From Anolis carolinensis (Eukaryota): 64,000 nucleotides of DNA. The DNA lies in NCBI RefSeq assembly GCF_035594765.1, contig NW_026943821.1:20243608-20307607 (forward strand). The letters are read 5' to 3'. The notes beneath the pieces are model-generated. The model was not told the origin of the DNA and did not search any database. It saw only the letters and a program-made list of their open reading frames with translations. Positions within the stretch are counted from its first letter, which is position 1. Every line of letters begins with the position of its first letter. Positions 13,067 through 46,640 of the stretch are shown here, piece by piece. Made by a program: the position numbers and the translations under genes.

Positions 13067-20236
<7,170 letters not shown>

Positions 20237-21464
20237 GATGCCGAATCTCTTCGTCGCCGTCGCGGCTTCTCTGCTTCTTCCCCTCAGTGTCCCGGCTTCC
20301 CTTCTCTTCCTTGTTTTCCCCACCGCTTGGCCCGCGGTTTTTTTTTTTTCTCTATCTCTCTCTCTCCGGGAAAGGGACGCGGAGCGCGCGAGAGGACGGG
20401 TTCGCGCCAACGCGGGCCAATCGCCGCCGGCGCCGCCGTCTCGAGCCGCTCGGCGAATCAGGAGCGCGTGCGCAGTGGGAGGAGGGGAGGGGGCGGGGCC
20501 GCCGGGGGATGCCTGCGCAGGCGCAGTGGCACTCTTGCTTCTCCCACCGTGGAAGCCGCCATTTTGAGGCATTTTGGCCTGTGTGCTGAGTGAGCGTGGT
20601 CCTGGGCTTCTTTCCTGTTTACCTATATACACATGTATGCATGAGGTATTCCTATACATAGTTGCATTCAGGGGTGAATAGGCGCTCGACCCAGCAGCCT
20701 CGAAAATAGCTTAAATGTACAGTAGAGTCTCACTTATCCAACCTTCGCTTATCCGATGTTCTGGATTATCCAACGTAGTCTGCCTCCTGCTCGGATCCAC
20801 TGCTGTTTCTCTAGGCAGCAAGGATTGAACTTTTTAGGGATTTAATTTCTGAAAATGTTGTTACTATAAGCTCATTTTATGCAATTCTATCTTTATTTTT
20901 AGTCAATTTGTTAGTAGCCAATTTGTATTAGTCAATGTTTTCAATACAATGTGATGTTTTGGTGCTAAATTCGTAAATACAGTAATTTCTACACAACGTT
21001 ACCATGTATCGAACTGCTTTTTCTGTCAATTTGTTGTAAAACATGTTTTGGTGCTTAATTTGTAAATTCATAATGTAATTTGAGATTTAATAGGCTTTTC
21101 CTTAATCCCTCCTTATTATCCAACATTTTTGCTTATCTAACTTTCTGCTGGCCCGTTTATGTTGGATAAATGAGATTCTACTGTATATATATATTAATAT
21201 AAGTAGATACATACTTTTTAAAGCAGCCATGGACAAACTTTGGCTCTCCAGGTGTTTTGGACTTCAGCTCCCACAATTCCTAACAGCCAGTATATCTCTA
21301 TATAAATATATATTCATATAAATATATATATGTTTATGGCTATAGCTATATATGTGTGACCGAAAAAGTATGTATATATGTGTTGTCGAAGGCTTTCATG
21401 GCCGGGATCACAGGGTTGTTGTATGTCTTTCGGGCTGTGTGGCCATGTTCCAGAAGCATTCTCT

Positions 21465-23648: not shown

Positions 23649-26600
23649 ATGGCGTTCAGTGAAGCTACGGAGCTGGACAATTACCGGGATTACAATTTAA
23701 CCGAGGACCAGAAGCTCATTAAAGCGAAATACGCTCCTATTTCGAAGAAGTACGAATGTGAGTCTTTCCCCTCGTGTTCCCTTTTCCATTTGAAAAGGAT
23801 TTCATTCTTCTTTTATTAATAAGGGGCCAAGAAATGCTGTTTGGGGCTGATCTATAGTTAAATCACTTGTATGTGTATATGTGTGTGTGTGTGTGTGTGC
23901 GTGTATGTGTGTATCTTGATTTCTCTTGCGTTCAAAGGAGACTCAATGCAATCACATCATGTTTAACCCAACATGTATAAGCCAGGCATGGGCAAACGTT
24001 GGCCCTCCAGGTGTTTTGGATTATAACTCACACAATTCCTAACAGCCAGTAGGAATTGTGGGAGTTGTTCTCCAAAACACCTGCCCCCCCCCCGAATATT
24101 TTTATATTTTAGTATAAAACACTAAAATAGAATTAAATATGGGACTTATCTAAAGCCAATGAAATAATTAAAACCATTTCTTGACTCCAGGGAAGGCAGT
24201 GGGCAAGTTGGAAATTGTTTGGTGAGAGGTTGTTGTTGTTGTCATTATTATTATTAACAGTATCATCTTTGTTGGTACATTGGTGTATCCCATCCTTTCC
24301 TAAACTGTAACTCAGAGTAGTTGACAAACTTCTTAAAATATAATGATACAAAGCACTACTTTGTATTCAAGGAGAAGCATGTAACAAATAAAATGCATTA
24401 TTATTATTACTTGTATATGAATGTTTTGAAAATATTTTATTTTCCCACTTACTGCTTCTTGTAAGCAACCTGGATTGTCTCCCAATTTATAACATGTTAT
24501 TGTAATATGAACTTAAAGAACTTGATTCTAGGGAATGAGTAAGTTGGCAATGATTGTGTGAGAGGCTAATATTATTATTATTATGAATACCTTTGTTGTT
24601 GTTATATCACATCTTTTTCCAAACTATAACTCAAAGCAGTTTTCAAACCTCTTAAGACGTTATGACACAAAATATCCATTTTTGTCTGCCCACTTACTGT
24701 TCCTTTTAAGAAGTCTTTTTTAAAAAAATTCTTTTTTACTCCCTCTGTAGATTTGGATCATACAGCTGATGTCCAGTGAGTATTGACTTATATAATAATA
24801 ATAAAATAATAATAATAATGGTGATGATGTACATGTTGCCTGCCTCTCCTCACCTCTCAAGGCAGACTACAATGAGTTACAACGCCCAGATCACATACAC
24901 TGCCATTACAAGGAGAAAGGAAGCAATATTGCCAGGTATTGCATGTTCCCTTCTGCTCCTCCCAAAGCAGAAACTGTGACTCGTTCTCTATTCTGTCAGC
25001 TGTGCTCTGATGGTGAATCACTATTGATCATAGTTTTGCTGATGATAGACCAACACTGTCTGGACTTACAGAAAATAGGAATCTGTTTTCTGGTAAATCG
25101 CAGTCAATTTTTAACTCTGAATTTTATATTCTGTCCCTATTGTGTTTTAATCTTGGTTCCTGTGTATTTTAGTATGTGCATTTTATAGAAATATGTTTTA
25201 ATATATGCATTTTATTTAATGTATTTGATTATAGTGGTGATGATGATGTACTTTAACTGTGTTTGGCCCCGCCTTGAACCGTAAGGAGAGACGGGTAACA
25301 AACAAATTATTATAATTATTATTATGAAGGTGACGATGATGGTAATAATAATAACAATAACAGTCACAACAATAACAGATGGTTTTGTTACCTGCCTCTC
25401 CTCAAAGCAGGGTACAACACAGTCAAAACACATAAACATAAGTACATTCAACAAAATATCTATATCAGAACGCGGCACTAAATGATACATACATCAAAAC
25501 ATATGGTACAAAGATCAAAATACATCAGTAATGGTTTATGATCCACAAAAACACGTTTGTCCATTAATCTGTTTATTGGCGGGTAACACATACATTGTTG
25601 TTTGACTGCCCCATGAAGGCAACAACAACAACAATAGTACACATGGTACAAAGGTCAAAATACAGCAGCAATAGATTATGATCCACAAAAAACTCATTCT
25701 GCAATAAATTATTTTATCTCAAAGCATCTCCATGGTGGTTTCTTGTAAAAGACTTAGCACAACTAGCATTCCGTATCTAGATTCAGTTCCTAGTAATGCA
25801 AGAAAAGTAGGGAATAAACATATGGTAGTCACAAAGTTTAAAAGGTAACTGCCATACATGGATTGGAGTTTTAATGTAAATAACATAGCATTTTGGGTAA
25901 CTGTTCCATCCCTTGCTGTGCCATATTACTGAGAATAAAGAATAATTAAAAGAATAAGATAGAGAGATTGTTTTTCTTTTTACAATAAAAGTAGGGGAAC
26001 ATATAAGTTTAAGAGTAGGAATAAAGAGTTAGCAAAATATAAGATAGGACCTTATATTTTTGACCTGCTTCCCCATGACCATTATGAAGCATTTCTGGTG
26101 TGTTTAGGCTGCATGCCTGGGGAGACACCTTGGAAGAGGCCTTTGAGCAATGCGCCATGGCCATGTTTGGATACATGACAGACGCAGAGACCGTGGAGCC
26201 CCTGGACACCGTCGAAGTGGAGGCAGAAGGTAGGAGGCCCCCCTGGATCTCCCTCGATTCCTGATCGTCCCATAAGCATCAACTTTCCAAGACGACAGGC
26301 AGGGATGGTTTCCCAGCACTGTTACCCAAGACCAATAATAATCAGAATCATTTTTCCAAGACCCCAGGCAGGGATTGTTCTCCAACTGCCACCTAAGACC
26401 ACTTTTGATGCATTATGGGAAAATGGAAGAAGGATTGGATACATCCAAAGGGTCGGCTCTTCCCATGAACCATTTAACCTTCTCCTTGTTAAGTGTAATG
26501 TGAAATGCAAAGGTCTGTTCTTGATTTATAAGGCTGTAGGATCTGGAAGACAACATGCTTCCTTAACATAATTAGGTGCTCTAAGAAGGAACATGAGGTG

Positions 26601-27211
26601 TCTTGGTGATCGTTGCACCAGTGTAGACCCTTTTATCCCTCACCTGTTAGTACCTGTTGCTGGAGAGAATAGGATGAGCATTTGTTCTCTTCTTATAATC
26701 TGTGTCTCATCTGGAAGCCTTCCTTTGCACTGAGAGAGATTCTCCACTTAGGACTGTTCCTTTTCTGCTTACCCGACAGGACATGACTTGTTGTCTCTTC
26801 TTTTTCACTTCCTGGACGAGTGGCTCTATAAATTCAGCGCCGAGGAGTTTTTCATTCCTAGGGTAAGTGCTTGTTGTATTCCAGTTTATAGACTAGGTTT
26901 TGGAATGAATTCTACATCGTCTCCAGATTGGTTACACTTCACACACTCTTATATTGCTAGTCCACTGGATCCATCCTGTATAAATTCAGCATTTTGGAGT
27001 TGGAATTAAGACACTACAATGAGCTAATAGGACATTGAAAGAGAGACAGTTTGGGGGCCAAGTGAAAATTACAAAGCAAAGTTTCCTTTCAAGTTTCACA
27101 TAAATGTTCTCTGAGTATGCTACAAAATAATAAAGAAAAAACTAAACAGAAAAAGTAGGTGATGATAATTATCTGAATTTCCCTTGAAAGAGAAGAAGTG
27201 GTATGATGATA

Positions 27212-27249
<38 letters not shown>

Positions 27250-28508
27250 ACATGACCAGTCTCATGAATCATCAGATAGTCATTCAGGAAAATCATAGAA
27301 TCATAAAATCATAGAGTTAGAAGAAACCGCAAAAGCCATCTAGTTCCAAATTCCCTGACTTTCAAACTGAATAACTTTTGATAACCTTAAACAGTCACAA
27401 ATTACTGTTATTGTTGTTATTATTATTATTTGACCTGAGATTACGTTACCTGGAGTATTTATCAGGTCTTACTAGATCTCTCTGAAGCATGTTTTTAAAA
27501 ATTGTAACTAACATTTTCTCTTTATTCCCATTTTTTTATTAGGAAATCAAAGTGCTTTCCATAGATCGATCGAGATACAAAATAAGGTCTATTGGGTAAG
27601 CAGAATCATCCAGAGTTGCCATTCATTTAACTAAGTCATACATTTAGCACCTGAAAGGAGGTAGCAATTTTTAGTGGATGTATATTTTAATTTGTTGAAT
27701 TGTATCCCTCCTTTCTCCCATCATGGGACTTATCAGGAAGCAAGGGAATTCTGGGGCAAGGTACAAAAAAACACTGCAGGAAATTTAAAAATCAGAATTA
27801 CAATTAAATCCTGGTTTATTTTAATTGGGAATGCCAAACAAATAAATAAAATCACTAAATGACAAACAAGATAATTGCATCGTGGATGCTATATATCCAG
27901 CATTGGAAGCACCTTCTGACAAGAGAAAAATGGGTTGTAAACATGTTTTAGAAGAATAGAAATGGATCAGTGGGCCATGATGAACAAAGGAAACACCCAA
28001 ACAACTTTCTCAAAGACTGGCAACCATTTCTAACATTGGGAGGGAGGACACGTTTTTATAGAAGGCTTCATCATTTAATCGGTCAGAGTTTTCGTGTGGA
28101 ATGTTTGAATAACTATTATGCTAAAAGGAGGAATGGGAAAATATTGTAATAGGAAAGAAAAATAGAACTGTACACGACGGTCTCTAACCCAAAGGGTGGG
28201 AAGTCACTGCAAAGGGGTGCGAGGGAAAGGTATAATTAGTGTAGAAGTAATTGTTTAATCTGGTTTTTTTTTTCATTTTTAAGGTGGGGAGAGGAATTCT
28301 CGCTGTCCAAACATCCTCAGGTAAGTCATGATGATGATGATGATGATTATTATTTATATCCTACTTTTTCTCTTTACAAGAACGCATAATAAATGCTTCC
28401 ATAAATGCTGTTAGCATTCTTTAGGCCTTGAAATACAGAAAGCCAACCATCAGATTGGTTTAACTATAACATGATTGTGACATATATATGTGTATATGTG
28501 TGTGTATG

Positions 28509-28551
<43 letters not shown>

Positions 28552-28881
28552 CTCCCCAGAATCTCTACATTCCCTCTCCAAAGTAATGAATGAAATGGCT
28601 AATCATTACTGTTTAATGAGGCTGACTTATGTCCAAGCGCTGGAGCCCTGATCAAGATGTTGAAGGAGGGGAAGCTTGTTGCATGACAGTATTTGCTTCC
28701 TTTTGCTGTCTCTTGCTATGCATCATCAGATAGTGTTGTTTGCCCATCCCTAGGCCACCAAAAGTTGGAGATATATTGTGTTTTTATTTGCCAGGGCACC
28801 GAGGTCAAGGCAATCACCTATTCGGCCATGCAGATCCATGAGGAGGAGAAGCCTGAGGTCTTTGTCATCATTGACATCTAA
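23649..28881 (+). CDS. ZBTB8OS: Protein archease (RTCB tRNA-ligase cofactor), 171 aa
   Basis: Exons 23649-23757, 24751-24775, 26108-26229, 26780-26862, 27543-27595, 28284-28320, 28795-28881 = 516 nt; motifs YEYLDHTADVQLHAWGDTLEEAFEQ, SLLFHFLDEWLYKFS, GTEVKAITYS, VFVIIDI. Confidence 0.96.
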
Positions 28882-29213
28882 GCCAAGGAAGCAAAGGGCA
28901 TTGCTCATGTTTCCTAGCAGAAATATCACACAGGAAGGGAATATGCCACCTTGGAAAGACTTGGGAACTGGTTCAGTGAATGGCAACGGTTGAAAAATTA
29001 TCATGAAGGTGGCAGTGACCCTTTAGGAATGTCCAGATCCGGATGATGCATCATGCAAGAAACTGTTTACAAAGAGAATTTGTATGTATGGAAATATTAA
29101 CCAAGGGTCATCCTGATGGTGCTGCCTATATTGTTTTCAATGGAGTCAGAGAAAATATCCTTCTTTGGGGATGAAATAGAGCTAGAACTGAACACTTATC
29201 TTCTTCTAATCAT

Positions 29214-30467: not shown

Positions 30468-31141
30468 ACGTTACTAGGTGAAGTGGCCCTCTGTGGTGAT
30501 GTCACTGGATTGGCCCTTCCTAGGTAAAGGATTGGCTGTTGCTGGGTGAACTGGCCTTTGGTGATATCACTGGATTGGCCCTTCCTAGGTAAAGGATTGG
30601 TTGTTGCTAGGTGAAGTGGCCTTTGGTGATATCACTGGATTGGCCCTTCCTAGGTAAAGGATTGGCTGTTGCTGGGTGAAGTGGCCTTCAGTAATATCAC
30701 TGGATTGGCCCTTCCTAGGTAAAGGATTGGCTGTTGCTAGATGAAGTGGCCTTCTGTGATATCACTGGATTGGCCCTTCCTAGGTAAAGGATTGGCTGTT
30801 GCTGGGTGAAGTGGCCTTCAGTAATATCACTGGATTGGCCCTTCCTAGGTAAAGGATTGGCTGTTGCTAGATGAAGTGGCCTTCTGTGATATCACTGGAT
30901 TGGCCCTTCCTAGGTAAAGGATTGGCTGTTGCTGGGTGAAGTGGCCTTCGGTGATATCACTGGATTGGCCCTTCCTAGGTAAAGGATTGGCTGTTGCTGG
31001 GTGAAGTGGTCTTCGGTGATATCACTGGATTGGCCCTTAGGTAAAGGATTGGTTGTTGTTAGATGAAGTGGCCCTCTGGTGTCACTGAAGTGGTCCTAGG
31101 TAAAAGATTGCTAGGTGAAGTGGCCCTCTGTGATGTCACTG
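30468..31141. repeat. 65-bp minisatellite, about 10 units
   Basis: TGGATTGGCCCTTCCTAGGTAAAGGATTGGCTGTTGCT.. at 30506, 30571, 30636, 30701, 30766, 30831, 30896, 30961, 31026. Confidence 0.92.
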
Positions 31142-31432
31142 AGAAAGAAAGGTGACGTACATACGAGTATAAGGAAGGAAAGAGACAAGGGAAAGAGGAA
31201 AGGAGATGAGAGAAAGAAAAAGGAAGAGAAAGGAGGAAAGGAAGGCGTCTCAGGGAAAAGAAGGGAAAACATTGCCATTAAGACATTGTGAGAGAGGCGT
31301 CAGAGCTGGAGAAAGGAGAAAGCAGACGAGTATAACCGATTATATGTCTATCTGCCCGACCAACAGTAAACATTTTTTATTATTACAATGACTTCCAGGA
31401 ACAAATAGCCAGTGGTCACCAAACTCAACCTC

Positions 31433-34400
31433 TCAGGTGCTCTCCCCCAAAGAGTGCTGGTCGAAGAGGTGCTCCCCGAGGCCATTGTGGGGCACCTCCA
31501 GGCGCCGCAGGTTGGAAACGTGACCTCCCATCTCCTTGACAGTTGCCACTTGGTCCTCCAAGAAGGACTTTAGGAAGTCGCACATCTGCAAGGAGAGAGA
31601 AAGCAGGGAGGCTGAAAGAGTGAAGAACTTTTTGCAAGTTGCATGTGTCTGAATGGGAACTCTTGAGTGTATTCTCAGTCCCATCCTCCTTGTTCACTTA
31701 CGTGCGGATCCCCTTTCTGCAGAGCCAGATGGTGCAAATCCAGGAGAGCTTGGTTCAGGATGCGCTCCAGCCGTAAGGCGCTCTCAAAGGCCACCAAACT
31801 GTTCTCCCATTCATCCTTTTCTGGCTTCTGAGGAGGAAAGACCAAGCAGTAAGGAAAATCACTCATGTATTTACATTTTCATGACTACTCAGCCTTTGTC
31901 AATGGATGAAAGAGGGTTGTTGTGTGTTTTCCAGGCTGTATAGCCATGTTCCAGAAGTATTCTCTCCTGACGTTTCGCCCACATCTATGGCAGGCATCCT
32001 CAGAGATTGTGAGGTATATGGGAAAACTAAGAAAGGTTTATTTATTTATTTAATACATTTATATCCCGCCCTTCTCACCCGAAGGGGACTCAGAGCGGCT
32101 TAGAAATTAAATTTACATACAATATTGTATTATTAGCATAGCACAATACTGGCAATAAATTACCATATTGTACTGTATATATTGTAATATTAATTTTTTT
32201 TTCGAGTCAGGAGCAACTGGAGTTGCTTCTGGAGTGAGAGAATTGGCCGTCTGCAAGGACGTTGCCCAGGGGACGCCTGGATGTTTTTGATGTTTTGTGG
32301 GAGGCTTCTCTCATGTCCCCGCATGGAGCTGGAGCTGATAGAGGGAGCTCATCCGTGCTCTCCCTGGGTGGGATTTGAACCTGGCAGCTTTCAGGTCAGC
32401 AACCCAACCTTCAAGTCAGGAGGCTTTTATGCCCTAGGCCACCAGAGGCTCCTAAAATTATTAATAATATTACATGTCATATATAATATATTATTAATAT
32501 TATATTTTATTAATTTTAAGGTAAAGGTTTTCCCCTAACGTTAAGTCCAGTCATGTCTGACTCTCGGGGTTGGTCTTATCTCCATTTCTAAGCCAAAGAG
32601 TCGGTGTTGTCCGTAGACACCTCCAAGGTCATGTGGCTGGCATGACTGCATGGAGCGCCGTTACCTTCCCGCCGGAGCGGTACCTATTGATCTACTCACA
32701 TTGGCATGTTTTTGAACTGCTAGGTTGGCAGGAGCTGGGGCTAATAGCGGGCACTCATTCAGCTCCCGGGATTTGAACCTGGGACCTTTTGGTCTGCAAG
32801 TTCAGCAGCTCAGCGCTTTAACACACTGTGCCACCAGGGGCCCCTATATTGTATTATTATTTATTTATTTACAGTATTTATATTCCGCCCTTCTCACCCC
32901 GAAGGGGACTTAGGGCGGATCACATTATATACATATAGGGCAAACATTCAATGCCTTAACATAGAACAAAGACAGAGAGAAACGCAGGCTCCGAGCTGGC
33001 CTCGAATTCATGACCTCTTGGTCAGAGTGATTTGTTGCAGCTGGCTGCTCACCAGCCTGCGCCACAGCCCGGGCCTATTATATATATATAATACTAATAT
33101 TATTAGTATTATATTGTATTACAAAATAATNNNNNNNNNNNNNNNNNNNNNNNNNNNNNNNNNNNNNNNNNNNNNNNNNNNNNNNNNNNNNNNNNNNNNN
33201 NNNNNNNNNNNNNNNNNNNNNNNNNNNNNNNNNNNNNNNNNNNNNNNNNNNNNNNNNNNNNNNNNNNNNNNNTAACAACCTCTGAGGATGCCTGACATAG
33301 ATGTGGGCAAAACGTCAGGAGAGAATACTTCTGGAACATGGCCATACAGCCCGGAAAACACACCACAGCCCTGTGATTCTGGCCATGAAAGCCTTCGACA
33401 ACACAATAGATGAAAGTTTACTTCTTTCGTCCATTCACCTGAATGTCCTTCAGCATGATGCACCCTCCTCTCTTGTTCTGATACTTGAGAAACGCCTCTG
33501 CGTCCGCACTCTTCTTGAGGGACTCTTTGCTGAAGAAGTCGGCCACGTGCTTCAGGGCCACGTCGTCACGCTTAAAGTAGTGGGACTGGGGTCAAGGAGG
33601 GAGAAAAGAACAAGAAACCATCAAAGGCCCTTTACCAGATCCGTTGATCAGTGATCAGTATTTTCTGACGTTTTCTACTGGTGTTATATACATCCTATCC
33701 ATCAGTTTCCACACTCACAAATTACACTCTATAACAAAATTTGAAAAAGTTTCTGTTCCTGGTTTGAAAGTGTTACATCCTGTTTAATAGTGTGGTGCTT
33801 ACGTTGAAAATAGTTGTTCTACTTCAGAAACTTGGTTTTTGTGGCTACCACAAACTAGGTTGAATTGGTTGAGACTCTATGAGATATTCACTGAAAAACT
33901 AGAGCAAAATGTGCTGCAGGATGTCCCTCCTGCACAAACATTTTTGCAGCTTAGGAAACTTTTCCCATGTTTTTATGATAGAACCAATTAAGAAATGATA
34001 TATATACCCCAGGAACAAAAATCGTGTTAGATATAGTGTTATTGAGCTGTTCTCATCATGCTTTGATTACACTTACCGTATATACTCGAGTATAAGCCAA
34101 CCCCAATATAAGCCGAGGCACCTAATTTTACCATAAAAAACTGGGAAAACATTGACTCCAGTATAAGCCGAGATACCAGTAAAATTACTGTATATACTCG
34201 AGTATAAGCCTAATTTTTCAGCCCTTTTTTTAAGACTGAAAAAGGCCCCTCGGCTTATACTCGGGTGAGGGTCCTGGTTGGCTTGTATTTGGGTCAGCTT
34301 ATACTTGAGAATATATGGTACATTTATTATTTTTCTCTATTATTATTGGTATTATTACATTTATTTTTTTCTCTATTATTGTTGCTACTATTACCTTTAT

Positions 34401-35862
34401 TTTACTCTATTATTATTAATAATACATTTATTATTTATATCTGATCTTATTATTATTACATTTAATATTCTACTCTATTTATTATTACATGTATTATTTT
34501 CCTGTATTTATTATTATTATTATTATTACATGTATTATTTTACTCTATTATTATTAAAAGGATACATAAGCACATTTACATTGAAGAAGATGAGAATAAT
34601 GATTTGATCAGAGTTGGACAGTCTTATCTTAAATTTGAGCTTTATGTAAATATTCAAAAACATTTAACCTACCGATGCCTCATTTAATGTAATTTTATTG
34701 GTATCTATTTTTATTTCTGAAATTTACCGCTCTCGGCTTATACTGGAGTGAATGTTTTCCCAGTTTTTTTGTGGTAAAATTAGGTGCCTCGGCTTATATT
34801 CGGGTCGGCTTATACTCGAGTATATACAGTGATATTTTGGTGCTAAATTCGTAAATACATTAATTACTACGTAGCATTACTGCGTATTGAACTACTTTTT
34901 CAGTCAAATTTGTTGTATAACATGCTGTTTTGGTGCTTAATTTGTAAAATCATAACCTAATTTGATGTTTAATAGGCTTCTCCTTAATCTCTTATTATTA
35001 TCCAACATATTCGCTTATCCAACGTTCTGCCGGTCCGTTTATGTTGGATAAGTGAGACTCTACTGTACATGCAGTAGGTAGGTAGTTAGGCAGGTATGGT
35101 AAATAGATACAGATCAATAGAGAGTAGATAGGTATGATAGATAGATAGATTGGAGAGAGAGAGGGAGAGCAGATTCTCCCAAAGGGCCGGGCTGTGGCGC
35201 AGCTGGCTAGTAACCCGCTGCAATAAATCACTACTGACCGAGAGGTCATGAGTTCGAAGCCCGGGTCGGGTTAAGCCCCCGACCATTGAATAGCCCAGCT
35301 TGCTGTTGACCTATGCAGCTCCGAAAGACAGTTGCATCTGTCAAGTAGGGAAATTTAGGTACGCTTTATGCGGGGAGGCTAATTTAACTAATGTACAACA
35401 TCATAAAACTGCCAGCAAAACACGAGGAATGGAATGAGGAAGTACAGCCACTACTGGACAGTGAAGCAACAGCTCCCCCTGTGGCCGGAATCGTGAAGCT
35501 GGAAAAAAAAAAGTTAAATGCCTCTGTGTCTGTCTATATATGTTGTTTGTCTGTTGGCATGGAATGTTTGCCATATATGTGTTCATTGTAATCCGCCCTG
35601 AGTCCCCTTCCGGGTGAGAAGGGCGGAATATAAATACTGTAAATAAATAAATGAAATCAATGGGGTTAAGTCCAACAGTGCTGTTGAAACATGTCCTATT
35701 TGGATCTAAAGAAGAAGTGCTGAGCATGTCCCACAAGAGAGAAGCAGCACGCAGGCTTACCATGGAGAGGTAGGCATAGCTGGCATAAAGCTCCAGGTTG
35801 GCCACGCAGTTCACGGCCGCCTCGCACTCCACGTGGTAGTTCTGGTTCACCTGGGAGCCCAT
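31433..35862 (-). CDS. Ferritin subunit-like protein, 175 aa (H/M-type framework, degenerate ferroxidase centre)
   Basis: Exons 35862-35761, 33585-33439, 31827-31702, 31585-31433, all phase 0 and GT-AG at canonical ferritin intron positions; [59 protein letters not shown]; AATAAA at 31381-31376. Confidence 0.92.
31913..33403. mobile_element. Second inverted Penelope-like insertion with nested SINEs, in ferritin intron 2
   Basis: PLE termini at 31913-32030(-) and 33273-33403(+); TSD CAAT(G/A)GATGAAAG at 31900-31912 and 33404-33416; N gap inside. Confidence 0.75.
31966..32006 (-). ncRNA. Minimal hammerhead motif, intact core, sense to the ferritin pre-mRNA
   Basis: UCU-CUGAGGA-U-GCCUGC..GUGGGC-GAAACGUC-AGG. 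Confidence 0.65.
34076..34829. mobile_element. MITE family B
   Basis: TIRs CCGTATATACTCGAGTATAAGCC ... GGCTTATACTCGAGTATATACAG. Confidence 0.8.
35186..35650 (+). mobile_element. tRNA-derived SINE (Anolis SINE2-like)
   Basis: Head GGGCTGTGGCGCAG..GAGTTCGA, tail GCCCTGAGTCCCCTTC.GGGTGAGAAGGGCGG-(AAAT)n. Relatives at 32860-33075(-), 36517-36745(+), 55295-55849(+), 57345-57575(-). Confidence 0.7.
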
Positions 35863-37120
35863 CTCTCAGTGGCTCCCGGTTGAGTCAAGGGCCACTCCAG
35901 GTTTGGGCACTGAACATTTCTGCCGAAGGCCTGTGACTCACCACCATTGTTCGTCCATATAATGGGACTCAATGGACAGGGAATGCCATTCAATAGCAAG
36001 TGGAGATGAGCACGTGGCCTCGCAGCGTGACACAAGGGTCTCCATGGCACCAGGGAAGGACAAGGCGATGCCAAGCAACACAATCACACTAGACAGAGAT
36101 CTTGAAGGTCCACAGGGAGGATTCTTGCTCTTATGTATCCAGGAACCAAAGGCTATCTAAGAAATGGACTAACCTGAGGCTGTGGTTAGCAGCCAGCTTC
36201 AATAAATCACTCTGACCAAGAAGTCATGAGTTCAAGGCCAGCCCATGTCGGGGTGAGCACCCGAAAATTTAAAATATAGCCCCTGCTCGTTGCTGACCTA
36301 AGCAACCCGAAAGATAGTTGCAACTATCAAGTAGGAAATTTAGGTACTGATGATACCAACATAACGCACTTTCGGCCCCGTTTCTTTGGATCCAATCCAA
36401 GATTTTAATCAGTATATTTTCTATGTGATTTTTTATGACTGTTTTTATTGTTGATGGTTTTGTTCTATTGCTTGTTTTTATATTGTTGATGTCCGGGCTT
36501 GGCCCCATCTAAGCTCAGGCTGTGGCGCAGGCTGGAGAGCAGCTGCAATGAATCACTGCAATGAATCACTCTGACCAGGAGGTCATGAGTTCGAGGCCCG
36601 CTCGGAGCCTATGTTTGTCTTGTCTTTGTTCTATGTTAAAAGACATTGAATGTTTGCCTATATGTGTAATGTGATCCGCCCTGAGTCCCCTTCGGGGTGA
36701 GAAGGGCGGAATATAAATGCTGTAAATAAATAATAAATAAATAAATAGCACATATTTAAAAGAAAACTTCCACGCCTCCGTGAGTTGTAATAGAGTAACT
36801 TACAATGAAGTTGTGAACTTTTATTTCGAAGCGCTCCTCAACATTGGAAAAAAAAGGATTGAGAAGAGATCCGCTGAATACTATCAAAAGTGATCATTGT
36901 CGTCGAATGGCAAATGAAATGCCATCTTGGGATGGACGAAATCGCAAGACTTGGGAGTAAATGCAAAAAAGTCATACAACGCTCTGTCCATAAATGCATG
37001 CAAGTCATAGAAGAGAAAACGGATGGTACGTTTAACTGCAGGCCGGTTGGGAGTCGAACGGTCAAGACAAAGGAACGGCAACCGAAAAAGGGGGGTTCTC
37101 CGCATCCAGTCCGTTCTGGA

Positions 37121-40100
37121 CTACCTGACGTTTGGCTTCACGTCTTTCTCGTCGTCCTCGCTGTCGTCCACTTGCTGGATAACCAGGTCGGTGGAGCTGT
37201 CCTCGACAATTTCCACGTCGGATTTGTTGTCCTCGCTGTAATTCCAGCTGGAGTCCTTGTCCTCTTCCAAAGGGAACTCTGGCGGAGGCTCCGTGTTTAA
37301 GTCAATGCGGATGCTGTCGATCCCGGCTTCGGAGAGGCACTCGTTGCACAACCTGTAGCGCCGCGTCCCGTCCTGGACCACCTGCCCGGTCATCTCCGTC
37401 ACGTGCCGCTTGCACTTCCGGCAGATGGGCTTGCAAGCTTGGTGGATCTGCGGAGAAACGGAAGAAGGCCAATGAATTTCAACAAGAAGTGTAGGAGACT
37501 TTACCCAGGCAGAAAAAAATAAAATGTACAGTTACAGGACGGTGGCTGCCTGGCTTGACAACAATGTTATATGTGAAAGAGACCTTGAGAGTCTTTGTGA
37601 CTTTTTTTTTTACAGAAGGAAGTTTAACGAGTGGTGAAAATTAAAATGTATAATACAGTAGAGTCTCACTTATCCAAGCCTCGCTTAATCAACGTTCTGG
37701 ATTATCCAACGCATTTTTGTAGTCAATGTTTTCAATATATCGTGATATTTTGGTGCTAAATTCGTAAATACAGTAATTACTACATAGCATTACTGCGTAC
37801 TGAACTACTTTTTCTGTCAAATTTGTTGTATAACATGATGTTGTGGTGCTTAATTTGTAAAATCATAACCTATTTTGATATTTAATGGGCTTTTTCTTAA
37901 TCTCTCCTTATTATCCAACATATTCGCTTATCCAACATTCTGCTGGCCCGTTTATGTTGGATAAGTGAGACTCTACTGTAGTCAAATTTGAAACCCCCAC
38001 GTTGAAATAGTCTTTCCTTCTAAAAACCTTTTTTGAAGAAGAAAAGAACTAGAGCTTACAATGGCTGGTGGCTTGTGAACAGGTTGTGAAACAGTGAAAA
38101 TAAGCAGATAATTCAGGTGTACAGTACAATCTCACTTATCCAAGCTAAACAGGCCGGCAGAAGCTTGGATAAGCGAATATTTTGGATAATAAGGAGGGAT
38201 TAAGGAAAAGTCTATTAAACATCAAATTAGATTATGATTTTACAAATTAGGCACCAAAACATCATGTTATACCACAAATTGGACAGAAAAAGTAGTTCAA
38301 TACGCCATCATGTTATGTTGTAATTACTGTATTTACGAATTTAGCACCAAAATATCACAATATATTGCAAACATTGACTACAAAAATGGCTTGGATAATC
38401 CAGAAGCTTGGATAAGCGAGACTTGGATAAGTGTGTTTCTTTGCCAAGTACTTTTGCATTTTTATATTGCCATTTGTTCAGATTTATTTGTTTATTTTCT
38501 TTTTAATATAAATATGGACACTTTTTAAAAATATAAATATGGACACTTTTTTAAAAAAAGAGTCTTTGTGGACAAGCTGAACATGAGCCAACAATGGGAT
38601 GCAGCAGCTGAAAAAGCCAATAGGATTTTGGGCTACATCAAAAGGTCGCACCGTTCGGAAATGGCTGGTGAGGTGGTCCAAGCGGCTGAAGCGCTTCCCG
38701 CAGGCCTCGCAGGGGTAGGGCCGCTCTCCCGTGTGGCAGCGCAAGTGGCGCTTGAGGTCTGCTTTCCGCTTCACCACGTGCGTGCAGAAGGGGCACTTGA
38801 AGCGCGTCCGGGGCAGGTCCTCTGCAAGGGGAGGGAGGGAGGGAAAGCAAGCCTTGTTAAGATCCTAAAAAGGGGGGGGGGGCATAACACATTTAGCACC
38901 ACTCTGTATCCACATACATACAGTCGCTTCTTCCAAGGATGTAAACACTGTACATGAACATGCAAGCAACACCGCAATTAAGTCCTGGCCCCACTCTCAT
39001 CTTCTGCTTTGGTCAGACCTTCTCACCTGTAATGACACTTGGTCCAAATCTGGGCAACAACATTCAAAGAGGAAATGGACACCATGGTAGATAGACAGAT
39101 ATGGTAGATAGATACGGTAGACAGACAGACGGATATGGTAGACAGTTAAGATATAGTAGAAAGAGACAGATACGGTAGATCGAAAGATACGGTAGATCGA
39201 AAGATATAGTAGATCGAAAGATACGGTAGACATACAGACAGATATGGGAGATAGTTAAGATATGGTAGAACGACAGACAGATACAGTAGATCAAAAGATA
39301 TGGTAGATTGATAGATACGGTTGATCAATATATACAGTAGACAGACAGATATGGGAGATAGTTAAGATATGGTAGAACGACAGACAGATACAGTAGATCA
39401 AAAGATATGGTAGATTGATAGATACGGTTGATCAATATATACAGTAGACAGACAGATATGGGAGATAGTTAAGATATAGTAGAACGACAGACAGATACGG
39501 TAGATCGATAGATATGGTAGATCGATAGATNNNNNNNNNNNNNNNNNNNNNNNNNNNNNNNNNNNNNNNNNNNNNNNNNNNNNNNNNNNNNNNNNNNNNN
39601 NNNNNNNNNNNNNNNNNNNNNNNNNNNNNNNNNNNNNNNNNNNNNNNNNNNNNNNNNNNNNNNNNNNNAATAGGCAGAAAGATAGGGTAGATACACGAAT
39701 ATGGTAGGTAGGTAGGTAGATAGAGTAAATAGATAGGTGTCCAGAGAAAGTGACCAATTCTGGAAACCATGAATCTCTCAGAGGAGTGCCTTATCAATAC
39801 ATATAATATTGATAATAATATTATAATGGAATACAATATTATACTACTAATAATACAATATAATAATAATTATATATTATATATTAAATGTAATATTACT
39901 AATAATATTACCATATAATGATATAAAGAAGCCCCGGTGGCAAAGTGCGTTAAAGCACTGAGCTGCAGACTGAAAGGTCCCAGGTTCAAGCCCCGGGAGC
40001 GGAATGAGTGCCCGCTGTTAGCCCCAGCTCCTGCCAACCTAGCAGTTCGAAAACATGTCAATGTGAGAGTAGATCAATGGGTACCGCTCCGGCGGGAAGG

Positions 40101-41835
40101 TAACGGCACTCCATGCAGTCATGCCGGCTACATGACCTTGGAGGTGTCTATGGACAACGCCGGCTCTTCGGCTTAGCAATGGAGATGAGCACCAACCCTC
40201 AGAGTCTGACACGATTAGACTTAATGTCAGGGGAAACCTTTACCTTTACCTATAATGATATAGTACAATATAGTAATTTAATGCTTATGTTGTGCTATGC
40301 TAATAATATATTGTATGTTCATTTGATTTGTAAGCCGCTCTGAGTCCCCTTCGGGGTGAGAAGAGCAGGATATAAATGTAGTAAATAAATAAATGTATTT
40401 TCATCTGCTGATGAAGTGCATCATGCCTGTATTTTCTTTCGTTATTTTGCAATTATCCGGGCTTGGCCCCATGTTAGTCGCCCCGAGTCCCTTTGGGAAG
40501 ATGGAGGCGGGGTATAAAAATAAGGTTATTATTATTACAATATAGTAATTTAATGCTTATATTGTGTTATGCTAATAATATATTGTGTGTTCATTTGATT
40601 TGTAAGCCGCTCTTGAGTCCCCTTCGGGGTGAGAAGAGTGGGTTATAAATGCAGTAAATAAATAAATAAATAATAAATACATGAATTTTCATCTGCTGAT
40701 GAAGTGCATTATGCATGTATTTTATTTTGTTATTTTGCAATTATCCGGGCTTGGCCCCATGTTAGTCACCCCGAGTCCCTTTGGGAAGATGGAGGCAGGG
40801 TACAAAAATAAAGTTATTATTAGTCACTGCGCGACAGTCAAAATATCAAATCCTGCACAGCAAAGACACAGAAATAAACACAGAACACATTTCCTTACCA
40901 TCTGCCCAATTCCCCATGACGCCCAACATGGAGGACATGCTATTGTAGGGCTCATCCCCTTTGGATGGTTTAGATTTGCTGGTGGAATGCAAAGAGTCCA
41001 GTTCTTGCGGGGCCACTGCCAAGCCCCTTGGGTTGCCATCGGACCCTTGGCCGTATTGGTACCCCACCGGGCCAGAATCCCCCTCCGAATCAATCTGGAG
41101 ATCGTCTTCCGGTGGAGAAGGATGGCTAACGGGTTCTGCGGCTCCGTCTTCCATCTTGCTCGACTTGTAGTGAGGGGCGTCGGGGGGCTGCGTCAGTCCC
41201 GAATGCCGGCTGTTTTTCTTCCCAGAGTCCGGCCTTTGGTCGTGTTTGGAGAGCGGCTGGACGTTCCTTTGCGAGGGCGGGTAATAGCTGAAACTGGTCC
41301 AGGAATTCCCGCTGTCCGGGCTCAAATGGGACGGAGGAGGGCTGCCCTCCGCTCGCCACCCGCCGCCGACTCCGCCGCCGTACAAACACAAACGCTCCAC
41401 GCCGTTCGAGTTCACGGCCTCTTTATCCGACAGGCTGAAGTAGCGGTCCTTCTCCTTCTCGCTGATGTCCAGGGAGGACTTGATGAAGGTCTTGCACACG
41501 CTGATGACGTCCGTCATCTGCAGGAAGCTGGCGGCCGACATGACCTCGATGACGTTCTGCCCCGTGAGAGAGAGCTTCCCTGAATAGACAAAGTCCAGGA
41601 TGACCGAAAAGGTCTCCGGGGCAAAGGCCTGGAAGGTGGCCGTGGAGGGCTGGCCGCTCTCTTTCGAGGACTGCGAGAGGAACATCTTGAAGTAGCCGCT
41701 GCTGGCGAAGAGCACGTTCCGGTGGGCCTTGAAGACCTTGCCTTCCACCACGATGCTGCAGTCGCAGAAGAGGTCCTGCCTGCGCTGCTCGTCCAACTGC
41801 TGCAGGAGGTGGAACTGGTGGGAGGAGATCTCCAT
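37121..41835 (-). CDS. ZBTB8A: Zinc finger and BTB domain protein 8A, 477 aa
   Basis: Exons 41835-40899 (BTB: [26 protein letters not shown]..), 38821-38652 (two C2H2 fingers, HTGERPY linker), 37447-37121; acceptor at 41863-62; AATAAA 36825-36820. Confidence 0.95.
39085..39735. repeat. GATA/GACA-derived complex satellite with N gap
   Basis: Reiterated TAGATAGA/GACAGACA/GATACGGTAGA units. Confidence 0.85.
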
Positions 41836-41932
41836 CCTCGACTGCTGCAGGCTTCCTTCCTCTGCAAAAGAGAAGGAACAGCACCCGTATTGACTACCAT
41901 CTCATGCACCGTCAATCTCATGCGCACCTCAA

Positions 41933-43815: not shown

Positions 43816-44099
43816 TTATTAGACTACATAAGGAGAGGTGGGTAATACATTTACTACAAAGATGAGCTGCGCTGGCCACGACTGACCAGAACCCATAGGG
43901 AGCAGGAGGCTGGGCTTCGGATCAAGGGAGCTGTGCTGTGACCATTCCCATCTGGCCTGTCTTATTCTACCCAATAGGAACCGGTGCTTTTTCCTCCTTC
44001 CATCTCTCCTTCCTCACTTCAGCTTCCCTGAAGATGTGTGCTGGCCAACTTCGCCAGGGATGGACGGGATTTCTCAACCCACCACAGAGACCGGGAAAA

Positions 44100-45995
44100 G
44101 GGCCAAGGAAGGAAGAAGGAAGGGAGGGAGGAGAAGATGTATAAGGAAGAAAAGAAAAGAGAGAAGGGGAGAGGAAAGGAGAANNNNNNNNNNNNNNNNN
44201 NNNNNNNNNNNNNNNNNNNNNNNNNNNNNNNNNNNNNNNNNNNNNNNNNNNNNNNNNNNNNNNNNNNNNNNNNNNNNNNNNNNNNNNNNNNNNNNNNNNN
44301 NNNNNNNNNNNNNNNNNNNNNNNNNNNNNNNNNNNNNNNNNNNNNNNNNNNNNNNNNNNNNNNNNNAAAGAAAAGAGTGAAGGAGAGAGGAAAGGAGAAA
44401 AGCAAGAAGGAAGGGACAGAGGAAGGAAGGAAGGAAGGGAGGGAGGGAGGGAGGGAGGGAGGGAGGGGAAGATGATTAAGGAAGAAAAGAAAAGAGGGAA
44501 GGAGAGAGGAAAGGANNNNNNNNNNNNNNNNNNNNNNNNNNNNNNNNNNNNNNNNNNNNNNNNNNNNNNNNNNNNNNNNNNNNNNNNNNNNNNNNNNNNN
44601 NNNNNNNNNNNNNNNNNNNNNNNNNNNNNNNNNNNNNNNNNNNNNNNNNNNNNNNNNNNNNNNNNNNNNNNNNNNNNNNNNNAAGAAAAGAGGGAAGGAG
44701 AGAGGAAAGGANNNNNNNNNNNNNNNNNNNNNNNNNNNNNNNNNNNNNNNNNNNNNNNNNNNNNNNNNNNNNNNNNNNNNNNNNNNNNNNNNNNNNNNNN
44801 NNNNNNNNNNNNNNNNNNNNNNNNNNNNNNNNNNNNNNNNNNNNNNNNNNNNNNNNNNNNNNNNNNATTAAGGAAGAAAAGAAAAGAGGGAAGGGGAGAG
44901 GAAAGGAGAANNNNNNNNNNNNNNNNNNNNNNNNNNNNNNNNNNNNNNNNNNNNNNNNNNNNNNNNNNNNNNNNNNNNNNNNNNNNNNNNNNNNNNNNNN
45001 NNNNNNNNNNNNNNNNNNNNNNNNNNNNNNNNNNNNNNNNNNNNNNNNNNNNNNNNNNNGCAGGAAGGAAGGGAAGAAGTTAGGGATGGAGGAAGGAAGG
45101 AAGGGAGAGAGGAAGGGAGAGAGGAAGAAAAGAAGGAAGAAAGGAACGAAGGAAGGAAGGAAAAATGAGAATATGAAGAAGGGGAAAAAGAAGGAAGGGA
45201 AGAGGAAGGGAGGAAAGAAGGGAGGGAGGGAGGGAGGAGAAGATGAATAAGGAAGAAAAGAAAAGAAATGGGAAGGAGAGAGGAAAGGAGAAAAGCAGGA
45301 AGGAAGGGAAGAAGGAATGGATGAAGGAAGGAAGGGAGAGAGGAAGGAGAAGAAGAAGGGAGGTAGGGAGGGAGGAAAGAAGAAAAGAAGGAAGGAAAAA
45401 GGAGAATGTGANNNNNNNNNNNNNNNNNNNNNNNNNNNNNNNNNNNNNNNNNNNNNNNNNNNNNNNNNNNNNNNNNNNNNNNNNNNNNNNNNNNNNNNNN
45501 NNNNNNNNNNNNNNNNNNNNNNNNNNNNNNNNNNNNNNNNNNNNNNNNNNNNNNNNNNNNNNNNNNNNNNNNNNNNNNNNNNNNNNNNNNNNNNNNNNNN
45601 NNNNNNNNNNNNNNNNNNNNNNNNNNNNNNNNNNNNNNNNNNNNNNNNNNNNNNNNNNGAAAAAGAAAGGAAGGGAAGAAGGAAGGGAGCAAAAAAGGGA
45701 GGAAGGGAGGAAGGAAAGAAGGAAGGAAAGAAAAAAGAAGGAAGGGAGAAATGAGAGAAGGATGGGAGGGAGGAAAGAAGGAAGGGAGGTTGGGAGGAAG
45801 GCTGGAATGAAGGAAAGGAGAAGAAGGAAGGAAAGAAAAAAGTCAGGAAAGGGAGGAAGAAATAAAAGAAGGATGGAAGAGGAGAAGAGGAAGGGAGGAA
45901 GGAGAAAAGGAAGGAAAGAAAGAAGGAAGGGAAGGAGGGAAGAAGGGAGGGGAAGAGGAAGAAGGGAGGACGGAAAGGTAGGAGGGAGGGAGGGA
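44100..45995. repeat. Polypurine (GA-rich) low-complexity tract with assembly gaps
   Basis: Nearly pure A/G plus strand with several N runs. Confidence 0.9.
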
Positions 45996-46640
45996 GGGCG
46001 CCAGGGATCCTCAGCCCCGCCCCGCCTCCTCCGCCTCCTCCTCCTCCTCCCCTGGCGGGCCACTCGCTCCGCACCGGAGGTTCCAAGGGACTCCCGCCAG
46101 GGACCCGGGAAGGAAGGAAGGGAGGAAGAGAGGAAGGGAGGGAAGGAGGAGAGAAGGGAAGGGCCAGGGGAGTCCCCGCTCGCCCGCCCGCCCGCCCGCC
46201 CGCCTCCCTGGAGACGGCTCCCCGCCCGCCCTCCCTCCCTCCCGCGCCCGCCCTCCCTCCCTCCCGCGCCCCTTCTTGCCCGGCTCAGCCCTCCTTGCCC
46301 TCGGCCGGGCCCCGCGGCGCCGCTCACCGTCCTGCGAGAGGCCGCGCCTGGGCGGAGGGCGCTGCGGGCGCTGCGGGCGAGGAAGCGAGGCAGGGAGGGA
46401 GAAGCCCGGCGGCGGCGGCGGGAAACAAAAGGCTGAGCCCAGCGCTGCTGCTGCCTCTGCCTCTGCTGCTGGTGATGATGATGACGTGGGCGTCGGAGGG
46501 CGGAAAAGAGAGAGAGGCGCCCCGGGGACACAGTTAAAGGGGCAAGGCGCAAAGAGGGCGGGGGAGCCAGGCAGGCAGGGAGGCGGGCGCTGCGCCCTTC
46601 CAGGCTCTGCCCACCACCCCTGCAGAACGCCCCGCAGGCA
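45995..46640 (-). promoter_or_regulatory. ZBTB8A CpG-island promoter and probable non-coding exon 1
   Basis: GC/CpG-rich, Sp1-like repeats, TGACGT half-CRE, minus-strand donor ACG|GTGAGC at 46328/46327. Confidence 0.7.

What the first reader, a model, noticed from the sequence alone, without database searches (positions are those of the whole stretch)
31433..35862. Intact, intron-containing ferritin with charge-reversed iron sites: a probable non-ferroxidase cage subunit
Seen: an uninterrupted 175-aa ORF over four canonical exons, with a poly(A) signal. Aligned by eye to human H-chain, E27, Y34, E107 and Q141 are kept, but helix B QSHEEREHAE becomes [10 protein letters not shown] (E61K, E62K, E64A, H65D). 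The 3-fold-channel motif CDFIETHY becomes CDFLKSF (E134 lost, 1-aa deletion) and E140 becomes D. Known: E62 and H65 are needed for ferroxidase activity, L chains compensate with a cavity Glu cluster that is also missing here, and D131/E134 gate Fe entry. Inference: neither H, M nor L function. It could modulate heteropolymers, form a cage for non-iron or anionic cargo, or be a germline-type protein analogous to FTHL17.
Basis: partly seen in the sequence, partly recalled or inferred. Interest (0 to 1): 0.75.

Follow-up and report, generated by a model that had tools for sequence, protein, structure and literature searches.

The report
Ferroxidase-dead ferritin subunit conserved in lizards
This is an intact, selectively maintained ferritin gene, already annotated as Anolis carolinensis "ferritin heavy chain B", that belongs to a lizard- and gecko-wide gene family which has lost the residues ferritins need to oxidise and admit iron, so it is probably an inert cage subunit that arose independently of the mammalian light chain.

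Summary
On the minus strand there is a four-exon, 175-aa ferritin gene with phase-0 GT-AG introns, a TGA stop and an AATAAA signal. The N gap lies inside intron 2 and touches no coding sequence.

The four exon translations are 100% identical to XP_003228764.1 / H9GQV1, "ferritin heavy chain B [Anolis carolinensis]".

It is not a private oddity. Thirteen squamates, from geckos to iguanians, carry an orthologue. In the six species where neighbouring genes were called, it sits in the same ZBTB8A – ferritin – archease slot, and RBBP4 follows in the three loci that reach that far.

The clade signature is Q58E, H60L, E61K, E62K, H65 to D/Y/Q/N, E134K and Y168H. The one-residue deletion is confined to Anolis, Sceloporus and Phrynosoma.

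dN/dS is 0.13–0.30 pairwise and 0.18 by maximum likelihood, so this is not a decaying duplicate. The predicted fold is a canonical ferritin subunit. No iron-responsive element was found.

E62K plus loss of H65 matches the engineered ferroxidase-null human H chain. The most likely reading is a catalytically inert, L-like subunit that arose independently of mammalian FTL.

No paper on this clade was found, and the scan had not noted it before.

The parts
35761..35862 (-). Exon 1 coding part (34 aa, ATG at 35862..35860). It holds E27 and Y34 in human H numbering.
   Evidence: Translation. GT donor at 35760-35759. 100% match to P0301 residues 1-34.
33439..33585 (-). Exon 2 (49 aa), helix B. The motif [10 protein letters not shown] is at 33525..33496. 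K58 and K59 (human E61, E62) are at 33516..33511. D62 (human H65) is at 33504..33502.
   Evidence: AG acceptor and GT donor read. HMMER alignment to bullfrog M ferritin. 100% match to P0301 residues 35-83.
31702..31827 (-). Exon 3 (42 aa), helix C. It holds the retained E107.
   Evidence: Splice sites read. Pfam Ferritin hit. 100% match to P0301 residues 84-125.
31433..31585 (-). Exon 4 coding part (50 aa plus TGA), helices D and E. K131 (human E134) is at 31570..31568. The one-residue deletion falls between 31565 and 31564. Q141 and H at position 168 are also here.
   Evidence: Sequence. HMMER alignment with a one-residue gap. 100% match to P0301 residues 126-175.
31376..31381 (-). AATAAA polyadenylation signal, 52 nt downstream of the stop codon.
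   Evidence: Read directly.
33131..33272 (.). Assembly gap (N) inside intron 2. It is not coding.
   Evidence: Intron 2 spans 33438..31828. The exons on both sides are complete and match P0301.
36008..36088 (-). Conserved block about 150-225 nt upstream of the ATG, a candidate core promoter. It holds an X-box-like palindrome at 36051..36037.
   Evidence: tblastx match to Podarcis L003 9708-9788. Eight-species alignment of the upstream regions. The transcription-factor reading rests on a remembered consensus and is not tested.
37178..41838 (-). Upstream neighbour: a ZBTB8A-like BTB zinc-finger gene (context, synteny anchor).
   Evidence: Pfam BTB hit on ORF 40846-41835. tblastx to the BTB/zf gene of Podarcis L003. 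The same neighbour is called in six orthologue loci.
23676..28908 (+). Downstream neighbour: archease (ZBTB8OS), tail to tail with the ferritin gene (context, synteny anchor).
Evidence: tblastx to the Pfam-Archease gene of Podarcis L003 at 15380-20327.

Best explanation
What is shown:
- This is the Anolis carolinensis gene annotated 'ferritin heavy chain B'.
- It is one member of an orthologue group found in 13 squamates, from geckos to iguanians.
- Wherever neighbouring genes were called, the orthologue sits between a ZBTB8A-like gene and archease.
- The group descends from the sauropsid M/H-like ferritins, not from FTL.
- It keeps the ferritin fold and evolves under purifying selection.
- It has replaced ferroxidase ligands E62 and H65, the Fe3+ exit and nucleation residue E61, and the three-fold-pore residue E134. 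Three of these four are now lysines.
- It has no iron-responsive element.

What is inferred:
- The subunit cannot oxidise iron.
- K62, with E27 and E107 retained, fills the former di-iron site with a salt bridge, as K62-E107 does in mammalian L chains.
- Lysine at 134 makes any three-fold pore it contributes to less attractive to Fe2+.
- The subunit most likely co-assembles with catalytically active H/M-type subunits and tunes the cage's uptake or stability. In that sense it is an L-like inert partner that arose independently, but without the L-type nucleation cluster.
For: - Identity to XP_003228764.1 / H9GQV1.
- Squamate clade with 100/99 support. It lies inside a sauropsid M-like group (95/100) and apart from the clade holding fish and amphibian H ferritins.
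- The ferritin lies between a BTB zinc-finger gene and archease in A. sagrei, Paroedura, Podarcis, Sceloporus, Phrynosoma and Tiliqua. RBBP4 follows in the three loci that reach it. The same neighbours are in the window.
- Clade signature Q58E, H60L/F, E61K, E62K (12/13), H65 non-His (13/13), E134K (12/13), Y168H (13/13).
- Pairwise dN/dS 0.13-0.30. Window versus A. sagrei is 0.16, Fisher p = 2e-7. ML omega is 0.177.
- AF2 model of the 92%-identical A. sagrei orthologue has pLDDT 88.7 and five helices, with helix D continuous across the deletion. Foldseek TM is 0.94 to frog M ferritin.
- The best PDB sequence match is bullfrog M at 227 bits, then human H at 209; no L chain is in the top 60.
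- E62K+H65G abolishes ferroxidase activity in human H (PMC6929972, PMC4029007).
- A K62-E107 salt bridge replaces the iron site in L chains (PMC11396501).
- E61 is key for Fe3+ exit and nucleation (PMC13411386).
- No IRE was found in the window or in seven orthologue loci. A frog control scored 54.5 bits.
Against: - No activity, assembly or expression data exist for this protein. Loss of ferroxidase activity is inferred from residue identity alone.
- E27, Y34, E107 and Q141 are retained, and iguanians have gained carboxylates at positions 58 and 65, so a remodelled metal site cannot be excluded.
- The heteropolymer role rests only on analogy with L chains, and the L-type nucleation cluster is absent.
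- The protein was seen on only one contig, a chromosome, in the protein collection. That is compatible with low or restricted expression.
- The IRE is also missing near the turtle and gharial M-like ferritins examined, so its absence is not specific to this clade.
Confidence: 0.6

Rival explanations
1. It is a specialised cage, or a non-cage protein, whose job is not bulk iron storage. It could form homopolymers with lysine-lined pores and a de-acidified inner surface. Alternatively it could have a tissue-restricted, iron-independent role, for example in germ line or ciliated cells, comparable to mammalian FTHL17.
For: - All three classes of iron-handling residue (ferroxidase, exit/nucleation, pore) are changed at once and kept changed across the clade.
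- There is no IRE.
- A conserved upstream block holds an X-box-like palindrome. The RFX reading comes from memory only.
- No transcript-sized contig carries the protein.
- FTHL17 is a precedent for a ferroxidase-less H-like ferritin (PMC13149808, citing Ruzzenenti 2015).
Against: - Nothing shows restricted expression; it simply was not measurable here.
- Overall subunit charge is ordinary, -1 to -10, so there is no global redesign of the cage.
- Unlike FTHL17, this gene has introns and is not a retrocopy.
Confidence: 0.2
2. It still oxidises or stores iron through a remodelled site, using E27, E107, Q141, Y34 and the new carboxylates E58 and D65. On this reading it is a divergent but active H/M-type subunit.
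For: - Four of the seven canonical centre residues are retained.
- Iguanians carry D at 65 and all members carry E at 58.
- Purifying selection shows that something is being maintained.
Against: - The bridging ligand E62 is a lysine in 12 of 13 species, and E62K is part of the classic ferroxidase-null mutant (PMC6929972).
- Residue 65 varies (D, Y, Q, N), which is not the behaviour of a metal ligand.
- The pore residue E134 is a lysine.
Confidence: 0.12
3. It is the reptile orthologue of the mammalian ferritin light chain (FTL).
For: - It shares K62 and several L-like residues, for example LNQALLDLH and GLGE (read from the sequence).
- Like L chains, it lacks ferroxidase ligands.
Against: - It lies in the ZBTB8A-archease-RBBP4 block. 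Human FTL lies between BAX and GYS1 on 19q13 (own knowledge).
- It nests inside sauropsid M-like ferritins.
- PDB matches rank M and H chains first, with no L chain in the top 60.
- It keeps E27 and lacks the L nucleation cluster.
- No mammalian FTL sequence was available for the tree, so this rival was not tested phylogenetically.
Confidence: 0.03
4. It is a decaying duplicate, an unprocessed pseudogene that happens still to be open.
For: - It evolves roughly three times faster than the H-type (177-aa) ferritin clade of the same tree (branch lengths).
- Iron-site residues are lost.
Against: - The ORF and all splice sites are intact in eight species examined at the DNA level.
- Omega is 0.18 overall and 0.16 between the two anoles, p = 2e-7.
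- The derived residues are themselves conserved across the squamates sampled, from geckos to iguanians.
Confidence: 0.02

Closest known systems
Bullfrog M (H') ferritin and other non-mammalian H/M-type ferritins
   Same: - It is the closest relative by sequence: 227 bits, about 60% identity.
- It is the closest by predicted structure: TM 0.94.
- The length is nearly the same, 175 versus 176 aa.
   Different: - M ferritin has all ferroxidase residues, the pore carboxylates and an IRE. A related frog ferritin locus scored 54.5 bits for IRE_I.
- This protein has K61, K62, D65 and K134 and has no IRE.
Mammalian ferritin light chain (FTL)
   Same: - It is a catalytically inert subunit with lysine at position 62 and glutamate at 107. 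In L chains these form a salt bridge in place of the di-iron site (PMC11396501).
   Different: - The origin is independent: a different locus and an M-like ancestry.
- E27 is kept.
- The cavity Glu cluster (57, 60, 61, 64) is absent.
- E134 is a lysine, whereas L chains keep D131 and E134 (own knowledge).
- It has no IRE.
Engineered human H-chain mutant E62K/H65G ('222', ferroxidase-null)
   Same: - It carries the same E62K change and the loss of His65. The mutant assembles but has no ferroxidase activity (PMC6929972, PMC4029007).
   Different: - The natural protein adds E61K, H60L, Q58E, E134K and Y168H, and in iguanians a one-residue deletion in helix D.
FTHL17 (mammalian ferritin-heavy-polypeptide-like 17)
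   Same: - It is an H-like ferritin reported to lack ferroxidase activity and to have a non-canonical role (PMC13149808, citing Ruzzenenti et al. 2015).
- It has no IRE (own knowledge).
   Different: - FTHL17 is an intronless X-linked mammalian retrogene family (own knowledge), expressed in embryonic stem cells and germ cells (PMC13149808).
- This is a four-exon gene at a conserved squamate locus, with unknown expression.

Membership tests
Eukaryotic 24-mer ferritin (Pfam PF00210) | Ferritin-like domain above Pfam's gathering score | tested here: met
   P0301, identical to the window's exons, scores 100 bits against a cut-off of 24.5. The single exons give 14-20 bits each.
Eukaryotic 24-mer ferritin (Pfam PF00210) | Four-helix bundle plus a short fifth helix E | tested here: met
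   The AF2 model of the 92%-identical A. sagrei orthologue has helices 11-39, 46-72, 93-121, 124-153 and 160-169, with pLDDT 88.7. Foldseek TM is 0.94 to frog M ferritin.
Eukaryotic 24-mer ferritin (Pfam PF00210) | Assembly into a 24-subunit cage | not testable with these tools
   Only a monomer was modelled. Assembly needs expression followed by native mass spectrometry or cryo-EM.
H-type (ferroxidase-active) ferritin subunit | Di-iron centre ligands E27, E62, H65, E107 and Q141, with Y34 and E61 nearby | tested here: not met
   E27, Y34, E107 and Q141 are present. E61K, E62K and H65D are changed. The same pattern holds in 12-13 of 13 clade members.
H-type (ferroxidase-active) ferritin subunit | Acidic three-fold pore (D131, E134) | tested here: not met
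   D131 is kept in the window, but E134 is K, and a one-residue deletion follows. D131 is H in Podarcis and N in Paroedura.
H and L ferritin mRNAs under IRP control | Iron-responsive element in the 5' UTR | tested here: not met
   No IRE_I or IRE_II at E<=10 in window 30500-38500. None at gathering score in seven orthologue loci. None by motif scan of 1 kb upstream. The frog control was found at 54.5 bits.
Mammalian-type L chain (FTL) | K62 with E107 replacing the di-iron site | tested here: met
   K at 62 and E at 107. The salt bridge itself is inferred, not seen.
Mammalian-type L chain (FTL) | Cavity nucleation cluster of glutamates at 57, 60, 61, 64 and 67 | tested here: not met
   The window has K, L, K, A, E at these positions.
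Mammalian-type L chain (FTL) | Orthology (position and phylogeny) | tested here: inconclusive
   The locus is ZBTB8A-archease-RBBP4 and the clade nests in sauropsid M-like ferritins. No mammalian FTL sequence was available for the tree. The human FTL location comes from own knowledge.
M-type ferritin (fish/amphibian) | Both a ferroxidase centre and L-like nucleation residues | tested here: not met
   Neither set is intact, although M ferritin is the closest relative by sequence.
FTHL17-like | Intronless retrogene | tested here: not met
   There are three introns at the ancestral positions. Expression was not testable.

The most novel reading that the evidence does not exclude
Squamates keep a ferritin whose three-fold pores and ferroxidase/exit region are lined with lysines. 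It would not be a storage subunit at all. It could be a natural Fe2+-excluding cage, or a dominant modulator of cages, with an iron-independent and tissue-restricted role such as germ line or ciliated cells. The missing IRE and a conserved X-box-like promoter element hint at this. It could also be a carrier for anionic cargo.
Probability: 0.15. Interest if true: 0.7.

Novelty: new variant of a known kind. Interest (0 to 1): 0.42.

Why it matters
Inert ferritin subunits are known from mammals (L chain), frogs and insects. How often and by what routes they arise is an open evolutionary question.

This clade would be an independent origin in lizards and geckos that reuses the same E62K switch as the mammalian L chain. 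Unlike the L chain, it also reverses the charge of the pore residue and of the iron-exit residue. It is therefore a natural experiment on which ferritin functions can be separated.

It also shows that the database name "ferritin heavy chain B" is misleading for these proteins. Iron-metabolism inferences in reptile transcriptomics that treat the gene as an H chain would be wrong.

Tried and rejected
- **Exon-by-exon searches.** Pfam, PDB and the representative library with exon 2 found no near-identical representative. The best was 66% identical, but it led to the clade.
- **Expression.**
  - The look-up of sequencing runs listed no run on record as RNA. The holders cover 40-68% of words including introns, so they look like DNA.
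- **Rfam at E<=10** found only chance-level hits.
- **Synteny outside squamates.**
  - The turtle (L004) and frog (L005) loci show only tandem ferritin copies within 10 kb.
  - The gharial locus (L006) shows no neighbour.
  - One turtle protein was not on record.
- **Third word search.** It used a fish L-type ferritin to look for reptile FTL and returned only teleosts in its top 120. Whether squamates also have a true FTL stays open.
- **Literature.** Searches for a described reptile non-ferroxidase ferritin found nothing.
- **Rejected readings.**
  - Pseudogene: rejected on omega.
  - FTL orthologue: rejected on locus and tree.
  - FTHL17-like retrogene: rejected because the gene has introns.
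  - Globally charge-reversed cage: rejected because net charge is ordinary.
Full report
**1. The observation**

The minus strand between 35862 and 31433 carries a four-exon ferritin gene.
- Exon 1 CDS is 35862..35761 (34 aa).
- Exon 2 is 33585..33439 (49 aa).
- Exon 3 is 31827..31702 (42 aa).
- Exon 4 is 31585..31433 (50 aa plus TGA).
- All three introns begin with GT, end with AG and lie between codons.
- An AATAAA sits at 31381..31376, 52 nt past the stop.

The assembly gap (33131-33272) lies inside intron 2 (33438..31828). The exons on both sides are complete and in frame, and the junction reads as in every orthologue. The gap is therefore irrelevant to the ORF.

**2. How the searches were done**

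The exons were concatenated only inside local scripts that read window.fa, for alignment, dN/dS and the tree.

Later, the listing of cluster members returned a database protein, P0301, that is identical to all four exon translations. Full-length searches used that id.

I took no contig for human.

**3. The residues**

- Kept: E27, Y34, E107, Q141.
- Changed: H60L, E61K, E62K, E64A, H65D, E134K, E140D.
- One residue is missing after CDFLKS.
- The cavity positions that form the L-chain nucleation cluster (57, 60, 61, 64, 67) read K, L, K, A, E.

**4. Identity**

The protein is XP_003228764.1 / UniProt H9GQV1, "ferritin heavy chain B [Anolis carolinensis]", at 175 of 175 residues. The window is therefore most likely A. 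carolinensis, and the gene is already annotated.

Pfam gives Ferritin at 100 bits. There is only one ferritin copy in the window.

**5. It is a clade, not an oddity**

The representative search with exon 2, followed by two word searches, found proteins with the same helix-B motif (ESLKK) and CDFLKS:
- Iguanians: Anolis sagrei (92% identical), Sceloporus, Phrynosoma.
- Lacertids: Podarcis, Zootoca, Lacerta.
- Elgaria.
- Tiliqua, Lerista, Hemicordylus.
- Geckos: Paroedura, Heteronotia, Euleptes.

The signature across 13 species, against 17 canonical ferritins, is:

| Position | Change | Species with the change |
|---|---|---|
| Q58 | E | 13/13 |
| H60 | L or F | 13/13 |
| E61 | K | 13/13 |
| E62 | K | 12/13 |
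| H65 | D, Y, Q or N | 13/13 |
| E134 | K | 12/13 |
| Y168 | H | 13/13 |

The one-residue deletion at position 136 is shared only by Anolis, Sceloporus and Phrynosoma.

Net charge (-1 to -10) is like that of ordinary ferritins, so the charge reversal is local.

I saw no member from snakes, Varanus, Pogona, Salvator or Rhineura among the top hits. That is "not seen", not shown absent.

**6. Position and ancestry**

In A. sagrei, Paroedura, Podarcis, Sceloporus, Phrynosoma and Tiliqua the orthologue lies between a BTB zinc-finger gene and archease. RBBP4 follows beyond archease in the three loci that reach that far.

- a SYNC-like intermediate-filament ORF,
- RBBP4,
- archease,
- the ferritin,
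- two ZBTB8-like genes.

From my own knowledge this is the human 1p35.1 block, not the FTH1 or FTL neighbourhood.

In a careful ML tree of 82 vertebrate ferritins:
- The clade has 100/99 support.
- Its nearest rows are a gharial protein (E62H, H65Q; 99/73) and one tuatara paralogue (E62K, H65N; 85/73).
- All sit inside a sauropsid M-like group (95/100).
- That group is separate from the clade that holds fish and amphibian H ferritins and the 177-aa squamate ferritins.
- The bootstrap had not fully settled, so those values are rough.

No mammalian FTL, FTH1 or FTMT sequence was available for the tree. PDB matches rank bullfrog M (227 bits) and human H (209) first, with no L chain in the top 60.

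**7. Constraint**

All eight genes examined at the DNA level have intact ORFs. Their internal splice sites are canonical, except that Elgaria has a GC donor in intron 1.
- Nei-Gojobori dN/dS is 0.13-0.30 for all 28 pairs.
- Window versus A. sagrei is 0.16: 15.5 non-synonymous and 22.5 synonymous differences. Fisher p = 2e-7.
- A GY94 codon model gives omega 0.177.

The clade evolves about three times faster than the H-type (177-aa) ferritin clade of the same tree (branch lengths), but it is clearly maintained.

**8. Structure**

AlphaFold2 on the A. sagrei orthologue with a 35-row alignment gives pLDDT 88.7 and the five ferritin helices. Helix D is continuous across the deletion. Foldseek's best match is frog M ferritin, TM 0.94.

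**9. Regulation**

Rfam finds no iron-responsive element in window 30500-38500 at E<=10. It finds none in seven orthologue loci at gathering score. A motif scan of 1 kb upstream finds none either.

A frog M-like ferritin served as positive control and scored 54.5 bits for IRE_I. The turtle cluster and the gharial locus also lack one, so the loss may be older than this clade.

An eight-species alignment shows a conserved block about 160-215 nt upstream of the ATG (window about 36008-36088). It holds an X-box-like palindrome. That is only a lead.

**10. Mechanism**

Shown: the points in sections 1-9.

Inferred from published work:
- E62K+H65G abolishes ferroxidase activity in human H chain (PMC6929972, PMC4029007).
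- K62-E107 forms a salt bridge in place of the iron site in L chains (PMC11396501).
- E61 carries Fe3+ out of the centre and seeds the mineral (PMC13411386).

From my own knowledge, D131 and E134 line the Fe2+ entry pore.

The protein is therefore most likely a catalytically inert subunit. I think it most probably co-assembles with active H/M-type subunits and tunes them (confidence 0.6 for the whole statement).

Rivals:
- A specialised non-storage role: 0.2.
- Residual activity through a remodelled site: 0.12.
- FTL orthologue: 0.03.
- Decaying duplicate: 0.02.

**11. Novelty and verdict**

The gene is annotated, but under a name that implies an active heavy chain. Six literature searches found no description of this clade.

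It is a new variant of a known kind: an independently evolved inert ferritin subunit with an unusual lysine-lined pore and exit site. Interest is moderate, because the biochemical claim is untested and expression could not be examined here.

Noticed in passing
window 36008-36088 (minus strand; X-box-like palindrome at 36051..36037): A block about 150-225 nt upstream of the ferritin ATG is conserved from Anolis to a gecko. It contains a palindrome resembling the RFX X-box (GTTGCC-AT-GGCAAC, from memory). The right half-site GGCAAC is exact in Podarcis and the other non-iguanians except Elgaria (AGCAAC), and is degenerate in the iguanians.
   Followed up: partly
L004 (Chelydra serpentina), whole locus: There is a tandem cluster of at least five M-like ferritin gene copies in 50 kb, judged from exon-1-like matches at about 10001, 18033, 25656, 36782, 44892 and 47670. 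Rfam finds no IRE anywhere in the locus, unlike the frog locus L005.
   Followed up: partly
P0242 (Gavialis, locus L006) and P0226 (Sphenodon): Two other sauropsid ferritins carry altered ferroxidase ligands: gharial E62H/H65Q and tuatara E62K/H65N. They are the nearest rows to the squamate clade in the tree. The loss of E62 and H65 may therefore predate squamates.
   Followed up: partly
window 31921-32020 and 33276-33372: Two inverted copies, about 90 nt each, of the same repeat lie 1.26 kb apart in ferritin intron 2. They bracket SINE-like sequence and the N gap. This was read directly.
   Followed up: no
window 44000-48300 and 61100-63000: Long tandem arrays appear here, seen as ORFs repeating ...WMAICREGFDCVF... 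and ...LDGKELDRKVLGGPNS... The first array is broken by many N gaps and sits beside an extremely G/A-skewed stretch (GC skew 0.83 at 44-46 kb).
   Followed up: no
Nothing was laid, so expression is untested.
   Followed up: no
P0002, P0187, P0304-P0306: RefSeq lists alternative isoforms of the orthologue in Paroedura, Hemicordylus, Podarcis raffonei and Lacerta agilis, either retaining intron 3 or starting in exon 2. This hints at transcript evidence in those species but was not checked.
   Followed up: no
(hit lists): No member of the ESLKK clade from snakes, Varanus, Pogona/Phrynocephalus, Salvator or Rhineura appeared among the top 120 hits, although canonical ferritins of those taxa did. 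This could mean lineage losses or missing annotation.
   Followed up: no
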